64,000 nt of DNA, taken from positions 180,472,774 to 180,536,773 of the forward strand of contig NC_068982.1 in NCBI RefSeq assembly GCF_001194135.2, written 5' to 3'. The notes beneath the pieces are model-generated. The model made no database searches. It saw only the letters and a program-made list of their open reading frames with translations, and had not been told where the DNA came from. The DNA comes from Octopus bimaculoides. Its lineage: Eukaryota. The position numbers were made by a program, and so were the translations under genes. Shown piece after piece: positions 5,294 through 63,945 of this stretch. Within the stretch, counting starts at the first letter, position 1; every line of letters begins with the position of its first letter.

Positions 5294-6590
5294 CCTAGTA
5301 TACACATAAATACTTTTACAAATTTTCTCCTTTAATTTTCCATAGGTTTTTGTACCTAAAATATTTTTTCGTTGTATCAGTCACAACCTTCTGCATTGAA
5401 TTTCGGGTATTAACTGATCTATTTTTCCTATTTAATAATGGAATGAGTGTCAAAGAAAACCGTATAACTTGTTGGTCTTCACATGTTAGGTCACGATGCA
5501 TCCACTATTTTCAAACTGCTTGAACCGCTTGAAAGTAACAAAATATTTCTATATCGCACCATAAAGTGGTTTGCAGCTGATCAGACTATCAATGACATTA
5601 CAAGGGAATGTCGTCCTTGCACTGTGAGGAACCCTAAGAAGGTCAAAGCTGTTGGAGCTATAATTCGAAAGATTCCTCTGAGGAAGCAAAACATTATGGC
5701 TAGAGAGACGAAAATTTCCCCCAGATTGATGTCTAAATTAACCAGGGAAGAGCTAAGGTTGCGTGACTATTATTGACTTACATGTTAAAACCTTCATTGA
5801 CAATGATCAGTGTGACAAGAGCCAAACAGCTTCTTCTCTGGTACGCAGGAGGTGCTCATAGAAACATCCTTTACACATATGAGAACATTTTCAACACAGA
5901 AGAAAACTACAACCGTCAAAATGACAGTGTATGCCCACAGCTCTAAGGAAGCTTCCGAGATCGTTCACAAAGTTTAAAGAGACCATCATCCTGCCTCAGT
6001 CATAGTTTGGAGGGATGTATCTTACGAAGGGGTGATTGAGCTTCATTTATGTGGAAAAAAGGGGTGAAAACCACGGATCATATGTACATCACTGATGACC
6101 TACTGGGTAAAGTTAAGAGCCTTAACAAATCCTTGTTCAATTGCAAAGAATGGAGCTTCCAGCAGCACTGAGCACCAGCACAAAAAGTCAAGGTTACTCA
6201 AGAGTGGCTGTCACAGAATGTTTCTGACATCATCAAGTTGGCGGATTAGCCCTTTGGCAGTCCGGATTTGAATCCTCTGAATCACAAACTGTAGTCAGGG
6301 TTGGAGGGAATGACTTGTGGTAAGCCGCACAAAAATTTGGATTATCTTAAGCGTGCTCTTGTCGCTGCAATGACCGACTAATTTTCCAACTAATATTGCG
6401 CGTACTGCAATAAATGAATACCCTGAGCGTTTGATGCGTTGTGTCGGCAACAGAGGGGATCATTTTGAATAAGTTTTGCGAAGTTATTTCTTTGTTCAGC
6501 CCACAGATAAATGTTCAAAATTTCATTTGAATGAGATCGATAACTATCCTGAAATCTTTTTATTTTAACAATATTTATGACTATACTAGG
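5294..6590 (+). mobile_element. Full-length defective DD37D (maT/Bmmar1-like) Tc1/mariner transposon, 1297 bp
   Basis: 25-bp TIRs, 21/25 match (5294-5318 CCTAGTATACACATAAATACTTTTA vs RC of 6566-6590 CCTAGTATAGTCATAAATATTGTTA); right flank TA, left TT; transposase remnant inside. Confidence 0.9.
5483..6472 (+). pseudogene. DD37D transposase pseudogene
   Basis: KKVKAVGAIIRKIPLRKQNIMARE..., ENIFNTEENYNRQND, HHPASVIVW, FQQH*APA...37 residues...SPDLNPLN; several stops and frameshifts, catalytic Asp positions replaced. Confidence 0.9.
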
Positions 6591-28231: not shown

Positions 28232-29173
28232 GTAAATACATGGTAAATACTGGGCTAAACTAAATGCGAAAGAAATAGACAGAGAAAAATCCCAGCAATG
28301 GCTGAGAAGCTCAGGACTCAAAGCAGAGACTGAAGGATTTTTAATTGCTGCACAAGACCAAAGCCTCCCCACCAGAAATTACCAAAAACACATAATGAAA
28401 AGAAATATAACAAGTAACTGTAGAATATGTGGAGATCGATANNNNNNNNNNNNNNNNNNNNNNNNNNNNNNNNNNNNNNNNNNNNNNNNNNNNNNNNNNN
28501 NNNNNNNNNNNNNNNNNNNNNNNNNNNNNNNNNNNNNNNNNNNNNNNNNNNNNNNNNNNNNNNNNNNNNNNNNNNNNNNNNNNNNNNNNNNNNNNNNNNN
28601 NNNNNNNNNNNNNNNNNNNNNNNNNNNNNNNNNNNNNNNNNNNNNNNNNNNNNNNNNNNNNNNNNNNNNNNNNNNNNNNNNNNNNNNNNNNNNNNNNNNN
28701 NNNNNNNNNNNNNNNNNNNNNNNNNNNNNNNNNNNNNNNNNNNNNNNNNNNNNNNNNNNNNNNNNNNNNNNNNNNNNNNNNNNNNNNNNNNNNNNNNNNN
28801 NNNAGATGACAACGTTTCTCTAAAAGAAATGGAAAAACTTTCAAAATACAAAGACCTGGAAATAGAGATAACTCGAATGTGGAATCTAAAAACAGAAACA
28901 ATTCCTATCATAGTAGGTGCCTTAGGTATAATAAAAAAATATTCAGACAAATACATAACAAAAATAGCAGGACTTACAAATATATATAACATACAGAAAA
29001 TTGCACTACTGGGCACTGCACACATCCTACGCAAAACACTTTCAATACAGTAACCATAAGAGCACCACAGCAAACCACAGCACATACCCAAGGCGCACAG
29101 AGTGGCGCTCGGTAGTGAAGTGAAAGCACGTTATAAAAATAAAACTACTGAATAATAATAATAATAATAATAA
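28231..29173 (+). mobile_element. 5'-truncated R4/Dong-clade RLE non-LTR retrotransposon in an (AAT)n array, interrupted by a gap
   Basis: QWLRSSGLKAETEGFLIAAQDQSLPTRNY...CRICG, then EKLSKYKDLEIEITRMW...IIVGALG...KIALLGTAHILRKTLSIQ*, ~100-bp 3' UTR and (AAT)n tail; no stops in visible parts. Confidence 0.92.
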
Positions 29174-29631: not shown

Positions 29632-30182
29632 GTGAACACATGGTGCAAGGCCGACAAATATCAAGGAGTGATGTTTGTAGAGGCCACAACCCATGGAGAA
29701 CTAGCCCGAAGATTTAGGATAGTTCTGAAAGAGTCCAAACTCAACATTAAAATCGTTGAAAACCATGGAGCTCCATCAAATCCCAGTTGTGGATCACATA
29801 CCCCTTTGAGGATACCACATGCACCGATGGAAACTGCATGGGATGTAATATTAACCCCAGCATTAACTGTAGAACAAGAAATGCAGTCTACAGCATAAGG
29901 TGCATAGAGGGTGCTTGTAAAGACAAGAACATGCCATACATTGGTGAGGCATCTAGAAGCATTGCGGAGAGGTTAAATGGAGGCTTGAGACAATATCAAG
30001 ACAACCCCCCCCCCCAGCCCTCCATACTCTACCAACATGTCAAACACCATCAGAGAGTCACACTGAATCGACTTGACATCTACATTTTATCCAAGCATCC
30101 GAAGGACCCAACTCTCAGACAAATACAGGAGTACGTCATCATAAATGAAACATCTCCTGTGCTACATAGGAGATACACATAG
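29632..30182 (+). pseudogene. Penelope-like element C-terminus: Cys-rich linker and GIY-YIG endonuclease, frameshifted
   Basis: VMFVEATTHGELARRFRIVLKESKLNIKIVE, then CTDGNCMGC...CRTRNAVYSIRC...YIGEASRSIAERL...RQIQE. Confidence 0.85.
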
Positions 30183-38334: not shown

Positions 38335-38545
38335 TCGGTGAATTGGCAGAATAGTTAGAGCGCCTGAAAAAATTTTTGCGATTCCAACTCTTTTCGTTCT
38401 GAATTCAAATCCCATTAAGGACAACATTGTCCTTCATGCCTTCTGAATCCATAAAATAGATTAACAGTAATATACTGGAGTCGACGGTATCGACAAAATT
38501 ACTGCCTCCAAAACTGCTGTCCTTCTGCCTAAAATCAGAAACTTA
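38335..38545 (+). mobile_element. Old diverged SINE family A copy
   Basis: CGGTGAATTGGCAGAATAGTTAGAGCG...TTCTGAATTCAAATCCC...CTGGAGTCGACGGTATCGAC. Confidence 0.7.
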
Positions 38546-38940
38546 ATTCTTTTTGAACTTAGGTAGTGCGGGAGACATAATTGTCTCTTCTTGTGAATTT
38601 GAGAAAAGGAGGATAACTGCAGCGAAAAGGGTTAATGTAACGTGAACTTGGGTGTATAAGTTTTCCTGAGTAGGTGGATGTCATCCTGTATCAGAAAGAC
38701 TGTGACTACCATGCATTAAGATATCCAGTCCAAGTTTTATCTCATACACTTGCCTTCGTTCTACGGGTTTATGCAAACTGCCCCGTTATATGCGGTATAA
38801 CTTTGTAATTTTTCTTTTATCCGACATAGATTATCATCATCATCTTTTATCCAACATAAATCATCATCATCATCATCATCGACATCACTATCGTTATCTG
38901 AAATGGAAGAATATGCAGTTGATTAATGCGAAGGCAGTGG

Positions 38941-41067
38941 GGATCTGTTCAGTTTCAATCACAGATTTAAAAATTAATTTTTTAAAAATTAAACAGATTG
39001 AAACTCCGTATACTGGTAGAATTTCTCACGTAGAACACGGTTTACTCTGAACGTTTTTGACAAAATTTCGTATTTTAGAAGTTATTTTGTGTTAAAGTTG
39101 TATTTCGTTAATTTTAAGTAATCAATTACACTTAGTTCAAGAAATGTACTGCTGTTTGCGGAAGTACAACAACTTCCGGGGTCATCTCTACTAAATGCAT
39201 TTTTCAACCGCGAGTGGTTTATTCGGATGGTTCTTTAGCTTGGCCGCTGTGTTTTGGGATATATTTACTTACTGCCTGTGATTATTTTCACCACTCTATT
39301 CTATTTTATTTTTGCTTACTTGCCTGCGTTAATGTCGAGATTTATTTTCGCCAACTTTCGTTTACTTGCCTGCGTTAATGTCGAGATTTATTTTCGCCAA
39401 CTTTCGTTTACTTGCCTGCGATAATTTCGGGATCTATTTTCACCAACTTTTCTTTACTTTCCTGCGTTAATTTGTATATGTTACACCTGCCTGGTTATTT
39501 TTTTATATGCGCGAGCTGTGTATGTATTGCCATGAAATCTTACAGTGCATTTCAAAGTTTAATATCCTGCATTAAAATTGATTTAATCTGCTTGTATTTT
39601 TCAATGTATCCCTGCTTTCGTATGCGTTACACGTGCCTGGTTATTTTTTATATGCACCTCTGCCCGAACTCTATATGTACTGCTATGAAATCTTATAATG
39701 CATTTCAAAGTTTAACATTCCGCATTAAAATTGATTTAATCTCTATCCATTTTTGTCTTTTTTTCTTTTGTGTACATCGTATACATGCTTCGTTATGTGT
39801 TAGGTTAGGTTTAGAGCTATGGTTTAGAATTAGGGTTAAATAACATGCTAAAGTTTAAATGGCCACGTATACTGTATGCTAAAGTGGCACTAAAGATTAA
39901 TTGAAACAGATTACCTATCAGAAATAAAGTCATGAAAGAGTTATCAGTGTCAGCACACTTTATTTCACATTTTCATGTTTTTGAGGGCAATAAAATAAAA
40001 TACGAGATACGTAAGTACTGGGTCAATATACTTGACTAATTGTGTGCTCCTATAAATTTCCTTGCTTTGTGCCTCTGTTAGAAATTCTTATTAGTACTAT
40101 TACTTAGTGCGAGTAATAGAAAAATGGTGTTTAGAAAACATTTGCAAGCTTCCTCAAACTGTTAATGTAAATGTAGATGATGTTTTTTCAACTTCTGTAA
40201 ATTAACGTCTGAGAAAAAAGTGATTCCTTGTAGAGGTTGCCATTCTAGAGGGAAATGATTGGATAAAATATTTAGTGTAAAGTTTGAGCTGTGAGACATG
40301 TTAAAGATGATGATGTGGGTTCAGTTTGATATAGTATACAGCTTATTAATTCACAAGAATAGCAGAGGCTGCTGTTTTTTCTTTTATTTAACTTTTTCTC
40401 TGTTTTATTTGAACAATAAAACAGAACTAATAAGAATTTCTAACAAAGGCACAAGCAAGAATTTTTTTAGGAGGACACAATTAGTCAACTACATTGACCC
40501 AGTACTTACATATCTAGTATTTTATTTTATTGCCCTCGGAAACATACAAAAGCAGCAGGGATACATTGACAAAAACAAGCTGAGATTATATCAATTTTAA
40601 TGCACGATATTAAACTTTGAAATGCACTGTAAGATTTCATAGCAGTACATACACAATTCGGGCAGAGGTGCATATAAAAAAATAACCAGGCACGTGTAAC
40701 ACATACAAATTATAACAGGCAAATAAACAAAAATAGAATAGAACAGTGCGGTGAAAATAATCACTGGCAATAGGTTAAAATATCCAGAAACACAGCAGCG
40801 AAGCTAAAGAACCATCCGAATAAACCACTCGCGGCTGAAAAATGCATTTAGTAGAGATGACCCGGAAGTTGTTGCTCTTCTACAAACAGCAGTACATTTC
40901 TTGAGCTAAATGTCATTGAATGGTTAAGATTACCCAAATACGAAATTTTGTCAAAAACGCTCAGAGTAAACCGTGTTCTACCTGAAAAATTCTACCAGTA
41001 TTCGAAGTTTCAAACTTTAATTTGAAAAAATTATTAAAAAATTCTGTGATTGAAACTGAATAGATCC
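38941..41067. mobile_element. Non-autonomous foldback DNA transposon, 2127 bp, long asymmetric TIRs, 8-bp TSD
   Basis: Termini GGATCTGTTCAGTTTCAATCACAGA / RC GGATCTATTCAGTTTCAATCACAGA (24/25); TSD GGCAGTGG at 38933-38940 and 41068-41075; arms 38941-40095 and 40426-41067; no ORF. Confidence 0.9.
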
Positions 41068-41075
41068 GGCAGTGG

Positions 41076-41270
41076 TTAAGTAGTATCGTTAAGGTATCGG
41101 ACCAAATAATTTGCGGTTCTTTACGTTTTGAGTTCAAATCCCGCTGAAATTAACTTTCTCTTTTATCCTCCGAGGCAGAAAACAGAAATCCATCAATGAA
41201 GTAGTGGAATCCATGTCGTCGACAAATCTTCCCTCATATTTCGGGCTTGTTGCCTATGTTAGAACAATGC
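41076..41270 (+). mobile_element. Old SINE family A copy whose head (38930-38940) was split off by the foldback insertion
   Basis: Joining flanks gives AAGGCAGTGG-TTAAGTAGTATCGTTAAGGTATCGGACCAAAT...TTTGAGTTCAAATCCCGCTGA, alignable to the SINE A head. Confidence 0.7.
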
Positions 41271-41329
41271 ATCATCACCCTCAGCACCATCGTCACAGCT
41301 GACACCGTGGTAGTGGTGATTTTCTAATA

Positions 41330-42170
41330 GTTCTGTGCTCGTCTCGTCTTCACCATCAGCTTCAGCTCCGTGCTCTTGAGGTTAAAGCAGCATTGCCTTT
41401 CGGAAATGTGGATTTCTGTCTATATACTGCACCCGATTTTCGCTGTTGTGGATTTATTTTGTTGTTTCTGGCGTCATTTTAGTGTTTTTGCTGTTGTGTT
41501 ATATACACAAGTTTCGTAAATGTTGCAGGTTGATCTTATATGTTCCACTTTCAGTGATTATGTAGAGTACGCTGCCTTACATTAACGGTTGCTCCAGTCA
41601 AGAATCTGAGTTAGATCATATGTTGATCATTTTATAAAATCTTCTCTGTGCAAAGTATGCGTGTATTATATGTTTAGTGGAAGAGAATGTGTTTGTATTA
41701 GACGCGCTATTTATTAGCTGCTGATTGTATAGTGTAATAGCTGTGAAGTCTGGCTTATTCAGCTGAGAGTGTCTCAGTTAGGATGTGGGCTCTGCTTACT
41801 AGAGATAGCTTCAACAAGGTATGCAACAGGTGTAATGTAAGCCCTAATGTGATTATTATTATACTCTTGTGCTGTTTTGTTGTAATCATATCTTGCGCTC
41901 AAGTTATTATTTTATTTGCAATGCTCCCATTTCCATGTCTCAACGTGCCTATTTCAATTTCAAAACCACTGTAAATTGACATTTTATAGATCTACATTTG
42001 GGCAATGCTTTGGTCAGAAAGAATTTTGGTGTGTATCAATACAGAGACATTTTCGTTCGACTAATAACATTATGAGAAGTGATTGTTTTGATCCTCTTGA
42101 AAAGAAAGAAAAGAAATGTAAGTTTGGTCTGGTACACTTTATATTCCTATAGCCCAGTTAATTTAACTGC
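41330..42170 (-). mobile_element. Possible ancient RTE-like remnant
   Basis: Only scattered peptides (VETW, IHAYFAQRR) resembling RTE ORF2 C-terminal motifs. Confidence 0.25.
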
Positions 42171-50492: not shown

Positions 50493-51502
50493 ATGGCCCC
50501 CAACACTGACGTCATATACCTTGATTTCATCAAGGCATTTGATAGAGTGGACCACAAAATCCTGCTGAAGAAACTGTCCAATATTGAAGTTCGTGGAAAG
50601 CTGCTGCAGTCGATAAAGTATTTCTTGGCGAACAGAAACGAACATGTGTTTGAAGGAATAACATCCAGCTTCGCCAAAGTTAGTAGTGGTGTCGTACAAA
50701 GTACTGCGCTGTGCCAACTCTACATCAATGACATAGTAGACGTCATCAAACATTCTACATTAAAAATCTTTGTAGATGATTCCCAACTCCAGACAGCCAT
50801 AAACAGTATGGGAGACCGAACATGCCTCCAGTCGGATCTGCTTGCTGTTGTCCAATGGGCAGAAAAAAACAGTATGCTTCTAAATGAAGATAAATTTGAT
50901 TTGATCTACTTTCGAAAAGAGGATACTCTGAAATTACCACATGCTCTTCCCTCAGGCAACTCTCTGATGTCATCCAACAACACCAGAGACCTTGGAGCAA
51001 TTGTTGATAACAATCTAAGCTGGTGTTCCCACATAAATAGCAAGGTTGACTAGGCCCGCAAGATGTGCTCCTGGATTCTGAGAACTTTCAGGTCTAGAGA
51101 TCCCTACGCCATCATCCTCCTCTACTCTACTTTTGCCCGCCCCCACTTTGAATACTGTTGCCCACTGTGGTCTCCCCATACGAAGCAACTCATTATGAAA
51201 GTAGAAGCACTCCAGAGGTCAATAACAAGAAAGACAGACGGCTTGAGAGGCATTGATTACTGAGGTCGACTAAAAAAACTCAATCTCTACTCTCTAAAAC
51301 GCCGCCGGGAGCGCTACATTATTTCTGTGATGTGGAAAATATTCCCTCAATATTGCATAAATGATGTTGGCATCAATTTTAAAATCCATCCTAGACTTGG
51401 CCTCCACGCTTCCCGCCCATTACAAAAATCGAACTCAGGAAACATAAAAACATTATGTAACAACTACTTTACCTCAACCGGCCCAGCTCTCTTTAATACC
51501 AT
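50493..51502 (+). pseudogene. CR1-clade LINE reverse transcriptase, 5' truncated, 3' end in gap
   Basis: One frame with two stops: YLDFIKAFDRVDHKILL, SGVVQS, LYINDI, FVDD, RDLG, EYCCPLWSPH, RRRERY. Confidence 0.95.
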
Positions 51503-60478: not shown

Positions 60479-60619
60479 ACACAGACACACACACATATAT
60501 ATATATATCAACAAAATATTCAAACATTGAGATTTGAAATCAGATGTCACTACTGTGGATAAATTTTAAAATTTATGATGTCACCAGCAGTGACACAGAT
60601 GGAACTGTATATATATATA

Positions 60620-61038
60620 GGCGTAGGAGTGGCTGTGTGGTAAGTAGCTTGCTTACCAACCACATGGTCCCGGATTCAGTCCCACTGCGTGGCATCTTGG
60701 GCAAGTGTCTTCTACTATAGCCTCGGGCCGACCGATGCCTTGTGAGTGGATTTGGTAGACGGAAACTGAAAGAAGCCTGTCGTATATATGTATATATATA
60801 TATATATGTATGTGTGTATGTGTTTGTATGTCTGTGTTTGTCCCCCCAACATCGCTTGACAACCGATGCTGGTGTGTTTATGTCCCCGTAACTTAGCGGT
60901 TCGGCAAAAGCGACCGAAAGAATAAGTACTAGGCTTCCAAAGAATAAGTCCTGGGGTCGATTTGCTTGACTAAAGGCGGTGCTCCAGCATGGCCACAGTC
61001 AAAAGACTGAAACAAGTAAAAGAGTAAAAGAGTAAGAG
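60620..61038 (+). mobile_element. Complete SINE family B copy (tRNA head, CORE-like TTGGGCAAGT motif, internal (TA)/(TG) microsatellite, TAAAAGAG tail)
   Basis: A-box-like TGGCTGTGTGG, B-box-like GGATTCAGTCCC, internal STR ~60783-60835, end GACTGAAACAAGTAAAAGAGTAAAAGAG. Confidence 0.92.
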
Positions 61039-62524: not shown

Positions 62525-63945
62525 TACACAGGTAAGTTTGAAGGTTGCCTAACGAAGATAGTTCTCACCAAATTGGAACAACACAACAGTGTATTCCTTT
62601 TGGGTAATATTAAATTCTCCAATGTGGGATGGCCTGGGGGATAGATGCTCTCAAGAATGACACACCAGCAGTAAGCAGAGGTGGAGACCCTGCTCCAACT
62701 GAACAAGGTTTTTCTTTCATGAAGCAAATTGTGCTCTATGAAAGAGAACCTCAACCGGTATTGACCTAAATGTCTCTCCACATCTGACGTTCACATGAAA
62801 CAGAAGCATTTCATTCCCATAGTGCAAGCCATGTAGGAGAAATCTGTCCCAGAGTGCAGGGCCAACGTGCACAAAAGCAGGATCCCTAGAGAAAGAAGAT
62901 TCTTATGAGAAGTTGGACAAAGATTGCAAACCATCTGAGCAAGCACCCCAAAAGTGGCGCGAAGTCTCACCTGGAGAGAGCGCTGTTGGAGATTGAGAAA
63001 AGTCTACAATTTCACGAAAAGTACACAACAAGATAGGACCCCTCTTTCAAAAATATGGCTCCCTCACAAGAAACCCAATGACGATAAGTGAAATGCTTAA
63101 CGTACAGTTTCAAAACGTGTTCGCTACAACTCTGGGTAAGTGAACAACCCAGCTGAATTCCTTCTCACTATGCCTATAACCAAAGAGGCGAAAATTGATT
63201 ACATCAACATTAAAGAAGATGTAACACAGGCCATAGATGAGGTTGACACAAACTCAGCTGCTGGCCCCAATGGATTCGAAGCGGTCCATCTCAAATCGTC
63301 CAAACGAACCCTTGAAAACCACTGCAGCTTCTTTTACAGAGCTTTCTTGCAAGTGGTAAGTTCCCAGTCAAACTGAAGGAGAGGATAATATAGTCTACCC
63401 CTATGGGAGTAATCAGAAAACATGCTAAAAATTATACGACTATCTCTCTGACTTCACACATCAGGAATGTCATGGTACGAATATTCCGGAAGAAACTACT
63501 CGCCTTCTTTGAAGTAGATGATTTGCTGACTGACACCAAACCTGAATTTCGACCAGGTAGAAACTGCATAACACAGCTATTGAAACACTACGACTGGGTG
63601 TTGAAACAGCTGCTAAAAGACTCAATGTGGATGTGATATATCTCCGCTTTACAAAAGCCTTTTAATAAAGTCAACCATGGTATTATATGTCACAAACTGC
63701 GTGATTTTGGTATAGTCGGAAAACTTGGAGAGCGGCTGCATTACTTTCTAAAAGATAGACGTCAGGCAGTGGTGCCCAATGAGGGCCACCTCAAAGGAAA
63801 CAAATAGTAGTGTTCCACAGGGCACTATCTTAGGGCTATTGCTATTCCTTGAGGCCCTCTCAGACCTGCCCTCAGTTGCTCAGATAGCCACATTGCTAGT
63901 TATGCAGATGACGCAAAAGTCTCTCAGACAATACAAAATCCTGGA
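62525..63945 (+). pseudogene. CR1-clade LINE ORF2 fragment (endonuclease end to RT)
   Basis: FLLGNIKF.NVGW, SAAGPNG, KNYTTISLTSHI, FRPGRNC, DVIYL..TKAF, VPQGTILG..LF, YADD; many frameshifts. Confidence 0.92.

What the first reader, a model, noticed from the sequence alone, without database searches (positions are those of the whole stretch)
38933..41075. 2.1-kb foldback transposon with 8-bp TSD, GG...CC ends and asymmetric, internally repeated TIRs
Arms of ~1150 and ~640 bp surround a 330-bp core. The left arm has a 46-bp unit x3.3 (39316-39470, first two identical) and a ~146-bp unit x2; the right arm has only one ~146-bp unit and a partial 46-bp unit. Removing the element and one TSD restores an old SINE head, confirming the boundaries. 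An 8-bp TSD with GG termini suggests Merlin; long subrepeated TIRs suggest MULE/Phantom-Foldback. I do not recognise the family. If transcribed it would form >600 bp of dsRNA.
Basis: partly seen in the sequence, partly recalled or inferred. Interest (0 to 1): 0.7.

Follow-up and report, generated by a model that had tools for sequence, protein, structure and literature searches.

The report
Octopus foldback transposon, probably Merlin-type
A 2.1-kb non-coding mobile element shaped like a giant hairpin sits in an octopus genome; it is a real but fairly ordinary DNA transposon whose ends and 8-bp insertion footprint best fit the Merlin group, which is unusually abundant in octopus.

Summary
Window 38941-41067 (2127 bp) is one foldback unit. 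Its 24-nt termini (GGATCTGTTCAGTTTCAATCACAG) match with one mismatch, and a perfect 8-bp direct repeat, GGCAGTGG, flanks it. The arms are about 1176 and 663 bp, 90% identical where they align, around a roughly 290-bp loop. The left arm holds a 46-bp array (x3.4, first two units identical) and two ~150-bp units; the right arm holds one unit of each kind. No ORF has homologues.

The window is octopus DNA. Relatives exist elsewhere:
- A 710-bp foldback MITE in O. bimaculoides has the same GGATCT ends, a perfect 8-bp TSD and about 250 nt of homologous subterminal sequence.
- Fragments occur in O. bimaculoides and O. sinensis.

So it is a transposon family, not two chance insertions.

GG ends plus 8-bp TSDs are the Merlin signature. 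Octopus Merlin elements that carry the transposase show the same signature, with termini GGTACT... and GGCGAT.... No autonomous copy with GGATCT ends was found, so Merlin membership is probable, not proven. Mutator/Foldback is the main rival.

Verdict: a new member of a known kind, of modest interest.

The parts
38933..40116 (.). Left TSD copy (38933-38940, GGCAGTGG) followed by the whole left arm (38941-40116, ~1176 bp)
38941..41067 (.). The complete foldback element, 2127 bp and 33% GC. It has no ORF with homologues.
38941..38965 (+). Left terminal inverted repeat, GGATCTGTTCAGTTTCAATCACAGA
   Evidence: 24 of 25 positions match the reverse complement of 41043-41067.
41043..41067 (-). Right terminal inverted repeat; its reverse complement reads GGATCTATTCAGTTTCAATCACAGA
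38991..39200 (+). Subterminal block of the left arm that is conserved across the family. It is the candidate transposase-binding region (inferred).
   Evidence: It is 69-76% identical to the arms of the L001 MITE and 73% identical to the L008 fragment. The alignment is A2.
40830..41016 (-). The same conserved subterminal block in the right arm. It lacks about 30-35 nt that the left arm and the relatives keep (left-arm 39070-39099), so this is a right-arm deletion.
39316..39471 (+). Tandem array of a 46-bp unit, 3.4 copies, in the left arm only. Units 1 and 2 are identical.
   Evidence: (family D1). The right arm has about one degenerate unit near 40709-40745.
39471..39757 (+). Two tandem units of about 146-153 bp (39471-39616 and 39617-39757). 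A degenerate start of a third unit lies at 39769-39801.
   Evidence: (D2, D3).
40554..40732 (-). The single ~150-bp unit of the right arm, which pairs with both left-arm units
   Evidence: 85-90% identity; I2, I6, I7, I10, I11.
39758..39974 (+). Left-arm-only segment with no partner in the right arm. It contains a short degenerate TTAGG/TTAGGG-like run at about 39793-39842.
39975..40116 (+). Inner inverted-repeat domain, left copy
   Evidence: 88% to 40545-40420; I3, I9.
40405..40545 (-). Inner inverted-repeat domain, right copy
40117..40404 (.). Unpaired middle domain (loop), about 288 bp, non-coding
41068..41075 (.). Right copy of the TSD, GGCAGTGG. It is also the first bases of the target SINE.
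41068..41227 (+). The insertion target: a diverged tRNA-derived octopus SINE copy with box A and box B. It is not part of the element.

Best explanation
This is a non-autonomous class II (cut-and-paste) transposon with a foldback structure. It belongs to an octopus family defined by GGATCT... termini and 8-bp target-site duplications, and it is most probably a derivative of the Merlin (IS1595-like DDE) superfamily.

Shown:
- It entered as one unit at the 5' edge of a SINE and duplicated 8 bp.
- Other family members, in other octopus loci and species, have the same ends, the same TSD length and about 250 nt of homologous subterminal sequence.
- It encodes nothing.

Inferred:
- A transposase supplied in trans recognises the GGATCT terminus and the conserved subterminal block, excises the element and reinserts it with an 8-bp staggered cut.
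- The very long arms grew by elongation of the TIRs and by tandem amplification of internal 46-bp and ~150-bp modules.
- The asymmetry between the arms comes from arm-specific changes in copy number and from indels. At least one is recent, because two 46-bp units are identical while the arms differ by 10%.
- As single-stranded DNA or as RNA the element would fold into a long imperfect hairpin.
For: Single insertion:
- Perfect 8-bp TSD and near-perfect 24-nt TIR, both far beyond chance.

Family:
- L001 5575-6284 (O. bimaculoides LGKD02092233.1) is a 710-bp foldback MITE with a perfect 25-nt TIR, GGATCTTTGGGGTTTGACGGGCAAC, and the 8-bp TSD TAACGTTG.
- Its arms, a right-end fragment at L001 4505-4601 and a fragment at L008 9932-10047 (O. 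sinensis) align with both window arms over about 250 nt.

Merlin signature:
- Merlin TIRs have a conserved terminal 5'-GG and 8- or 9-bp TSDs, and O. bimaculoides has 191 Merlin proteins (PMC8101967).
- Octopus elements that carry a DDE_Tnp_IS1595 ORF show this signature. The P0077 family (L002, L004) is 8.7 kb with ~354-bp TIRs, termini GGCGATGTTTCG and 8-bp TSDs GCAAATCT and CAAGGCTT.
- The P0016 family has termini GGTACTATTTAAG.

Comparison of termini:
- Ours is GGATCTGTTCAG.
- Euglena Merlin F1 is GGTACTTGTTCG.
- A complete 1059-bp Merlin in Logan contigs is GGTACTTCTACAG.

Other points:
- No coding capacity.
- Hairpin: MFE -958 kcal/mol against -457 +/- 11 for shuffles, with 564 inter-arm pairs.
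- Merlin families are recently active in O. vulgaris (PMC13282606).
Against: - No copy with GGATCT ends enclosing a transposase was found.
- The two GGATCT-type fragments that lie 0.5-1.1 kb 3' of P0004-clade Merlin ORFs (L001, L008) may be nested insertions. The intact relative of that clade (L005) ends in GGTACT..., not GGATCT.
- Only two complete family members give TSDs.
- GG termini also occur in some MULEs, and most described foldback elements are assigned to Mutator (PMC4079207).
- The similarity of the termini beyond GG is only a few bases.
- Dfam and Repbase could not be consulted.
Confidence: 0.6

Rival explanations
1. It is a Mutator-superfamily (MULE/Phantom/Foldback) non-autonomous element. 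A MULE transposase would mobilise it, and the foldback structure would be the family hallmark.
For: - The architecture is modular, with long TIRs, tandem subrepeats and a non-coding middle domain. This matches classical foldback elements, most of which are placed in Mutator (PMC4079207).
- Tetris has 8-10-bp TSDs.
- Mutator families are present and recently active in O. vulgaris.
Against: - Both complete family members have exactly 8-bp TSDs, whereas MULE/FB TSDs are typically 9-10 bp (established knowledge; 9-10 bp for most Tetris copies).
- The termini resemble Merlin GGTACT/GGCGAT ends.
- The foldback form is known to arise independently in different superfamilies (Marzo et al. 2008, as cited in PMC4079207).
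- No MULE locus could be examined here.
Confidence: 0.2
2. It is a non-autonomous member of another superfamily with 8-bp TSDs (hAT, P/Galileo-like, Zisupton or Novosib).
For: The TSD is 8 bp. Galileo shows that long TIRs with tandem repeats occur outside Mutator.
Against: - hAT ends are typically YARNG and P/Galileo ends begin with CA (established knowledge). This family begins GGATCT in every end seen.
- The TSD GGCAGTGG does not fit the hAT nTnnnnAn preference (established knowledge; weak as a single observation).
Confidence: 0.07
3. It is not a transposon. It would be a local inverted duplication or an assembly artefact, or two independent insertions that happen to face each other.
For: The window is a gapped draft assembly with many runs of N. 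Only one copy lies in the window.
Against: - The region 38500-41500 contains no N.
- The arms differ by 10% and by several indels and repeat-number changes. This is unlike an assembly fold-back.
- A perfect TSD lies exactly at the TIR tips.
- Homologous elements with the same tips and the same TSD length occur in independent assemblies of other octopus species.
Confidence: 0.02

Closest known systems
Merlin superfamily DNA transposons (Feschotte 2004; DDE_Tnp_IS1595 / ISXO2-like transposase) and their MITE derivatives
   Same: - The terminal 5'-GG and the 8-bp TSD.
- TIRs can be long: up to 462 bp in the literature and about 354 bp in the octopus P0077 family.
- The superfamily is abundant in octopus.
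- Hairpin-like MITE derivatives with GG ends and 8-9-bp TSDs occur in the same genomes (L008 9190-9606 and 9636-9882; L005 6778-7249).
- The termini are of the GG(T/A)(A/T)CT type.
   Different: - No transposase is linked to GGATCT ends.
- The arms of 0.66-1.18 kb, with 46-bp and ~150-bp tandem modules, are much longer and more modular than any Merlin TIR I could document here.
- The terminal 25 nt are not alignable with the two octopus Merlin families that carry a transposase.
Foldback elements (Drosophila FB, Tetris, Galileo/Kepler/Newton; sea-urchin TU; Chironomus TFB1)
   Same: - Nearly the whole element is two long inverted arms built of domains: a terminal domain, tandem-repeat domains and an inner domain.
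- The arms surround a short non-coding middle domain.
- The arms differ in repeat number.
- Copies are non-autonomous (for the definition; for this element).
   Different: - FB and Tetris are assigned to Mutator with mostly 9-10-bp TSDs. Galileo is in the P superfamily with 7-bp TSDs (and established knowledge). This element has 8 bp and GGATCT ends.
- It shares no sequence similarity with any of them. 'Foldback' is a structural class, not a clade.
The 710-bp GGATCT foldback MITE of Octopus bimaculoides (L001 5575-6284; contig LGKD02092233.1)
   Same: - The same first six bases and an 8-bp TSD.
- About 170-250 nt of homologous subterminal sequence at 69-76% identity.
- A foldback shape.
- A degenerate TTAGGG-like run in the interior.
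   Different: - It is three times shorter.
- It lacks the 46-bp and ~150-bp modules, the inner IR and the loop of the window element.
- Positions 7-50 of the termini differ.
- At less than 80% identity it is a sister family rather than the same family.

Membership tests
Merlin superfamily | TIRs beginning with a conserved 5'-GG | tested here: met
   Both ends of the window element, both ends of the L001 MITE and the L001 4601 end all start GGATCT. The definition comes from PMC8101967.
Merlin superfamily | TSD of 8 or 9 bp | tested here: met
   The TSDs are GGCAGTGG (window) and TAACGTTG (L001), both perfect 8-mers. Only two complete copies were available.
Merlin superfamily | Mobilised by, or derived from, an element that encodes a DDE_Tnp_IS1595 transposase and has the same ends | tested here: inconclusive
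   - The element and the window hold no Merlin ORF.
- GGATCT-type right-arm fragments lie 3' of P0004-clade Merlin ORFs in L001 and L008, in the expected orientation.
- The intact clade member L005 ends in GGTACT....
- No autonomous copy with GGATCT ends was found.
Foldback elements (structural class) | Long modular TIRs with internal tandem repeats, a short non-coding middle domain and no transposase in most copies | tested here: met
   The arms are 1176 and 663 bp, with 46-bp and ~150-bp tandem modules, an inner IR and a 288-bp loop. There are no ORFs with homologues.
Mutator / Phantom / FB superfamily | TSD typically 9-10 bp (range 8-11) | tested here: not met
   The TSD is 8 bp in 2 of 2 complete copies and cannot be extended to 9. 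With two copies this is weak, and Tetris shows 8-9 bp in some copies.
Mutator / Phantom / FB superfamily | MULE (MURA-like or Phantom) transposase in autonomous partners that share the ends | not tested
hAT superfamily | 8-bp TSD together with short TIRs that begin YARNG | tested here: not met
   The TSD length fits, but every terminus begins GGATC. The consensus for hAT termini is from established knowledge.
P superfamily (including Galileo) | 7-8-bp TSD, termini beginning with CA and a THAP-domain transposase | tested here: not met
   The termini begin GG. The transposase could not be tested.

The most novel reading that the evidence does not exclude
The GGATCT family could be a true foldback lineage inside the Merlin superfamily. 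It would have kilobase-scale, modular arms rich in tandem repeats, a form so far documented mainly for Mutator and P elements. In coleoid cephalopods, copies transcribed within genes could supply long imperfect hairpin RNAs: about 560 paired bases here, with helices up to 35 bp. Such RNAs could serve as substrates for ADAR editing or for small-RNA pathways. The tandem modules could also seed satellite-like arrays, as Tetris did in Drosophila virilis.
Probability: 0.3. Interest if true: 0.45.

Novelty: new member of a known kind. Interest (0 to 1): 0.3.

Why it matters
If the Merlin assignment holds, this would be an example of the foldback architecture arising in a further DNA-transposon superfamily. 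That would support the view that foldback structure is convergent: loss of the transposase plus TIR elongation. It would also help classify part of the large unclassified TIR/MITE fraction of octopus genomes.

Long hairpin elements are hotspots for ectopic recombination and for dsRNA formation. A census would therefore be useful for studies of structural variation and RNA editing in octopus. On its own, one decayed non-autonomous copy inside a SINE has no evident functional consequence.

Tried and rejected
1. I searched for other copies through spurious ORFs. The 143-aa ORF (39412-39843) has no exact record and no homologue among 5.8 billion proteins. The RT ORF is also not on record.
2. I ran exact-pattern scans of JGI metagenome contigs and IMG/VR with the terminal 24-mer and with family-conserved subterminal patterns. 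All four were empty. These collections evidently hold no octopus DNA.
3. Rfam and tRNA scans of the window found nothing, so the target SINE is too diverged to score as a tRNA.
4. tblastn of Merlin proteins against the window found no remnant. Octopus P0077- and P0016-type TIRs and MITEs are also absent from the window.
5. L006 and L007 (ENA contigs carrying Merlin ORFs) share no repeats with the window. They are not octopus and were dropped.
6. I tested whether the P0004-clade Merlin is the autonomous partner and could not establish it. L001 and L008 are 5'-truncated copies. Homology to the intact L005 copy stops before the GGATCT-type pieces, and L005 itself ends in GGTACT... without a clean TSD.
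7. I tested whether transposase-bearing octopus Merlins also have long tandem units in their TIRs. They do not: the repeats inside the P0077 TIRs are only (TGTA)n microsatellite.
8. Literature searches for foldback elements in octopus or cephalopods, and for Merlin foldback elements, returned nothing relevant.
9. One folding script was killed by a faulty shuffle routine. It was rerun with mononucleotide shuffles.
10. I considered dating the insertion from arm divergence: K2P 0.11, which gives about 15 My at 0.0036 per site per My. I rejected this as unreliable, because the arms of the sister MITE are only 71% identical despite perfect tips. Arms therefore need not be identical at insertion.

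Full report
**1. What is in the sequence**

Window 38941-41067 is a 2127-bp, 33%-GC foldback unit. It starts GGATCTGTTCAGTTTCAATCACAG. The reverse complement of its end is the same 24-mer with one mismatch. These are the only two matches in the 64-kb window, with none expected in shuffles.

GGCAGTGG lies immediately outside both tips, at 38933-38940 and 41068-41075. The repeat cannot be lengthened or shifted. Considering every GGATC...GATCC pair within 12 kb, 0.0009 exact 8-bp flanking repeats are expected by chance. A scan for any 14-nt inverted termini with a perfect 8-bp flanking repeat returns this element, plus one microsatellite artefact and one palindrome artefact.

**2. Anatomy**

Self-BLAST and the repeat finders and a global arm-to-arm alignment give this map.

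| Module | Left arm | Right arm |
|---|---|---|
| Terminal/subterminal domain | 38941-39326 | 41067-40716 |
| 46-bp tandem array | 39316-39471, 3.4 units; units 1 and 2 are 46/46 identical, unit 3 is 39/46 | about one degenerate unit |
| ~146-153-bp units | 39471-39616 and 39617-39757, ~82% alike | a single unit, 40554-40732 |
| Unpaired segment | 39758-39974, with the degenerate start of a third unit and a short TTAGG/TTAGGG-like run | none |
| Inner inverted repeat | 39975-40116 | 40545-40405 |

- The loop is 40117-40404.
- The arms are therefore about 1176 and 663 bp.
- Over 647 alignable positions they are 89.8% identical (K2P 0.11).
- About 30 nt at 39070-39099 are missing from the right arm. 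Relatives keep them, so this is a right-arm deletion.
- No ORF exceeds 143 aa. That ORF has no homologue, and no Merlin-like coding remnant is present.
- Folded as RNA, the element gives -958 kcal/mol against -457 +/- 11 for shuffles. It has 564 inter-arm pairs and perfect helices of at most 35 bp.

**3. The target site**

The sequence to the right is a diverged tRNA-derived SINE of the type scattered through the window. Aligned with nine other copies, the SINE begins at or just before the TSD. Only its box-B region is significantly similar to other copies. Removing the element and one TSD therefore restores at most two bases of continuity. TIR plus TSD define the boundaries.

**4. Host**

The window shares SINEs and other repeats at 80-97% identity with loci from O. 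sinensis, O. vulgaris and O. bimaculoides. It has the gapped, microsatellite-rich look of a draft octopus assembly. It is octopus DNA. I did not determine the species.

**5. Relatives**

The public DNA collections on hand hold no octopus sequence. I therefore reached octopus DNA through proteins.

- PMC8101967 states that Merlin elements have TIRs with a conserved terminal 5'-GG and 8-9-bp TSDs. It also reports that O. bimaculoides has 191 Merlin proteins.
- I took one of these proteins (KOF79200.1) as a query and retrieved octopus Merlin proteins and their genomic loci.
- Contig L001 (O. bimaculoides) holds a 710-bp foldback MITE at 5575-6284. It has a perfect 25-nt TIR, GGATCTTTGGGGTTTGACGGGCAAC, and the perfect 8-bp TSD TAACGTTG.
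- Its arms match both arms of the window element at 69-76% over about 170 nt.
- L001 4505-4601 is a solitary right end of the same type, ending ...AAGATCC.
- L008 9932-10047 (O. sinensis) is a right-arm fragment, 86% identical to the L001 MITE and 73% identical to the window element.
- Alignment A2 shows about 250 nt of shared blocks. After GGATCT these include TT(G/C)AAACTYCGWATACTGGTAGAAT, GAAGTTATTTYRTGTTAAAGTTGTCRTATTTCGGTAATTTCAACCAATCA and TTACTGCTGT...CAACAACAACTTCCGG.

That family has at least two sub-families and is present in at least two octopus species.

**6. Superfamily**

Octopus elements that do carry a DDE_Tnp_IS1595 ORF show the Merlin signature.

- P0077 family: 8.7-kb copies, 99.6% identical on two O. 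sinensis chromosomes and 99% identical to an O. vulgaris copy. TIRs are about 354 bp, termini are GGCGATGTTTCG/GGCATAGTTTCG, and the 8-bp TSDs are GCAAATCT and CAAGGCTT.
- P0016 family: termini GGTACTATTTAAG.
- Short hairpin MITEs of both families are nested in L005 and L008 with 8-9-bp TSDs.

Merlin termini from elsewhere are GGTACTTGTTCG (Euglena F1), GGCATATTGTAA (Monocercomonoides F4) and GGTACTTCTACAG (complete 1059-bp elements in Logan contigs). GGATCTGTTCAG fits this pattern and fits neither hAT (YARNG) nor P (CA...) ends.

This makes Merlin the best-supported superfamily, but the decisive feature is missing: no transposase sits between GGATCT ends. In both L001 and L008 the GGATCT-type pieces lie 0.5-1.1 kb 3' of P0004-clade Merlin ORFs, in the orientation expected of a right arm. 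That is suggestive. However, those copies are 5'-truncated, the region is a nest of other MITE insertions, and the intact clade member in L005 ends in GGTACT.... I regard that association as unresolved.

The Mutator/Foldback alternative remains open, because most classical foldback elements are assigned to Mutator and Tetris shows 8-10-bp TSDs. I could not examine octopus MULE loci.

**7. Mechanism**

Shown:
- One insertion event with an 8-bp duplication.
- No coding capacity.
- Family-level conservation confined to the tip and to roughly 250 subterminal nucleotides.
- Arm asymmetry caused by tandem-repeat copy number and indels.

Inferred:
- Mobilisation in trans by a DDE transposase that binds the tip and the conserved subterminal block.
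- Growth of the arms by TIR elongation and by slippage or unequal exchange within the 46-bp and ~150-bp modules.
- A recent extra 46-bp duplication, since two units are identical within arms that are 10% diverged.
- Potential to form cruciform DNA or a long imperfect hairpin RNA.

I do not trust a date derived from arm divergence, because the sister MITE has perfect tips but arms only 71% identical.

**8. Novelty and verdict**

The finding is real and correctly described. It is a non-autonomous foldback DNA transposon of an octopus GGATCT/8-bp family, probably Merlin-derived (confidence about 0.6 for the full statement and above 0.95 that it is a transposon).

I found no paper describing foldback elements in cephalopods or foldback-type Merlin derivatives. 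Dfam, Repbase and the curated octopus libraries could not be checked, and octopus genomes are known to hold many unclassified TIR and MITE families. I rate it a new member of a known kind, with modest interest.

Noticed in passing
L002 265-8996, L004 252-8997 (O. sinensis) and L003 (O. vulgaris): An 8.7-kb Merlin element has a 305-aa DDE_Tnp_IS1595 ORF, ~354-bp TIRs (GGCGATGTTTCG...) and 8-bp TSDs. It is 99-99.6% identical between two chromosomes and between two species, at sites that are apparently not orthologous. It looks recently active. At 8.7 kb it is far larger than typical Merlins and has an extra internal inverted repeat (638-981 against 5412-5755).
   Followed up: partly
L008 9190-9606 and 9636-9882; L005 6778-7249: Short hairpin MITEs of two Merlin families are nested in or beside Merlin transposase genes, and one interrupts the P0016 ORF. 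The pile-up in the 3' region of L008 suggests that Merlin-type elements insert preferentially into each other or nearby.
   Followed up: partly
L001 5888-6030; L005 3399-3492; window 39793-39842: Degenerate TTAGGG-like (telomere-like) runs occur in three places. In the L001 foldback MITE they sit in the interior in inverted arrangement. In L005 they form a stand-alone interstitial block. In the left-only segment of the window element they are only faint.
   Followed up: partly
window 21181, 21445, 22016, 35995, 38389, 47038, 47366, 47578, 47797 (approximate starts): The window holds many copies of a tRNA-derived SINE (head GGTGAGCTGGCAGAATCGTTAGC...). Several are directly preceded by (ATT)n or (ACT)n trinucleotide runs. 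ARAGORN and Rfam score none of them.
   Followed up: partly
window 60612-61034: A repeat of about 420 bp is 88-90% identical to at least four copies in O. sinensis and O. vulgaris loci (L005, L003). It is a high-copy family of unknown class.
   Followed up: no
window 63033-63943: A stretch of about 910 bp is 73% identical to an internal part of the 8.7-kb Merlin element (L002 2893-3823), far from that element's transposase gene. That part of the big element may itself be a captured or nested repeat.
   Followed up: no
window 50493-51053 (+): This is a reverse-transcriptase fragment (Pfam RVT_1, E 6e-14), most likely a decayed retrotransposon of unassigned type. It is followed by an N gap.
   Followed up: partly
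window 29787-30182 (+) and 28427-29053 (+): One ORF gives a weak GIY-YIG match (E 0.009, below the Pfam cut-off) and may be a Penelope-like endonuclease remnant. The neighbouring ORF fragment beside an N gap has no Pfam match.
   Followed up: partly
L001 1374-1988 and 275-884: Two further palindromic (foldback-like) structures lie on the same O. bimaculoides contig. They have arms of 60-124 nt at 81-97% complementarity and are unrelated in sequence to the GGATCT family. Hairpin-shaped repeats seem common in this genome.
   Followed up: no
L010-L012 (Logan contigs from SRR22455136, SRR22455138 and SRR22455140): These are complete, compact 1059-bp Merlin elements with 30-nt TIRs (GGTACTTCTACAGAACAGCCCACCCATGG) and a 299-aa ORF. 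They were assembled as stand-alone contigs from an unidentified organism.
   Followed up: no
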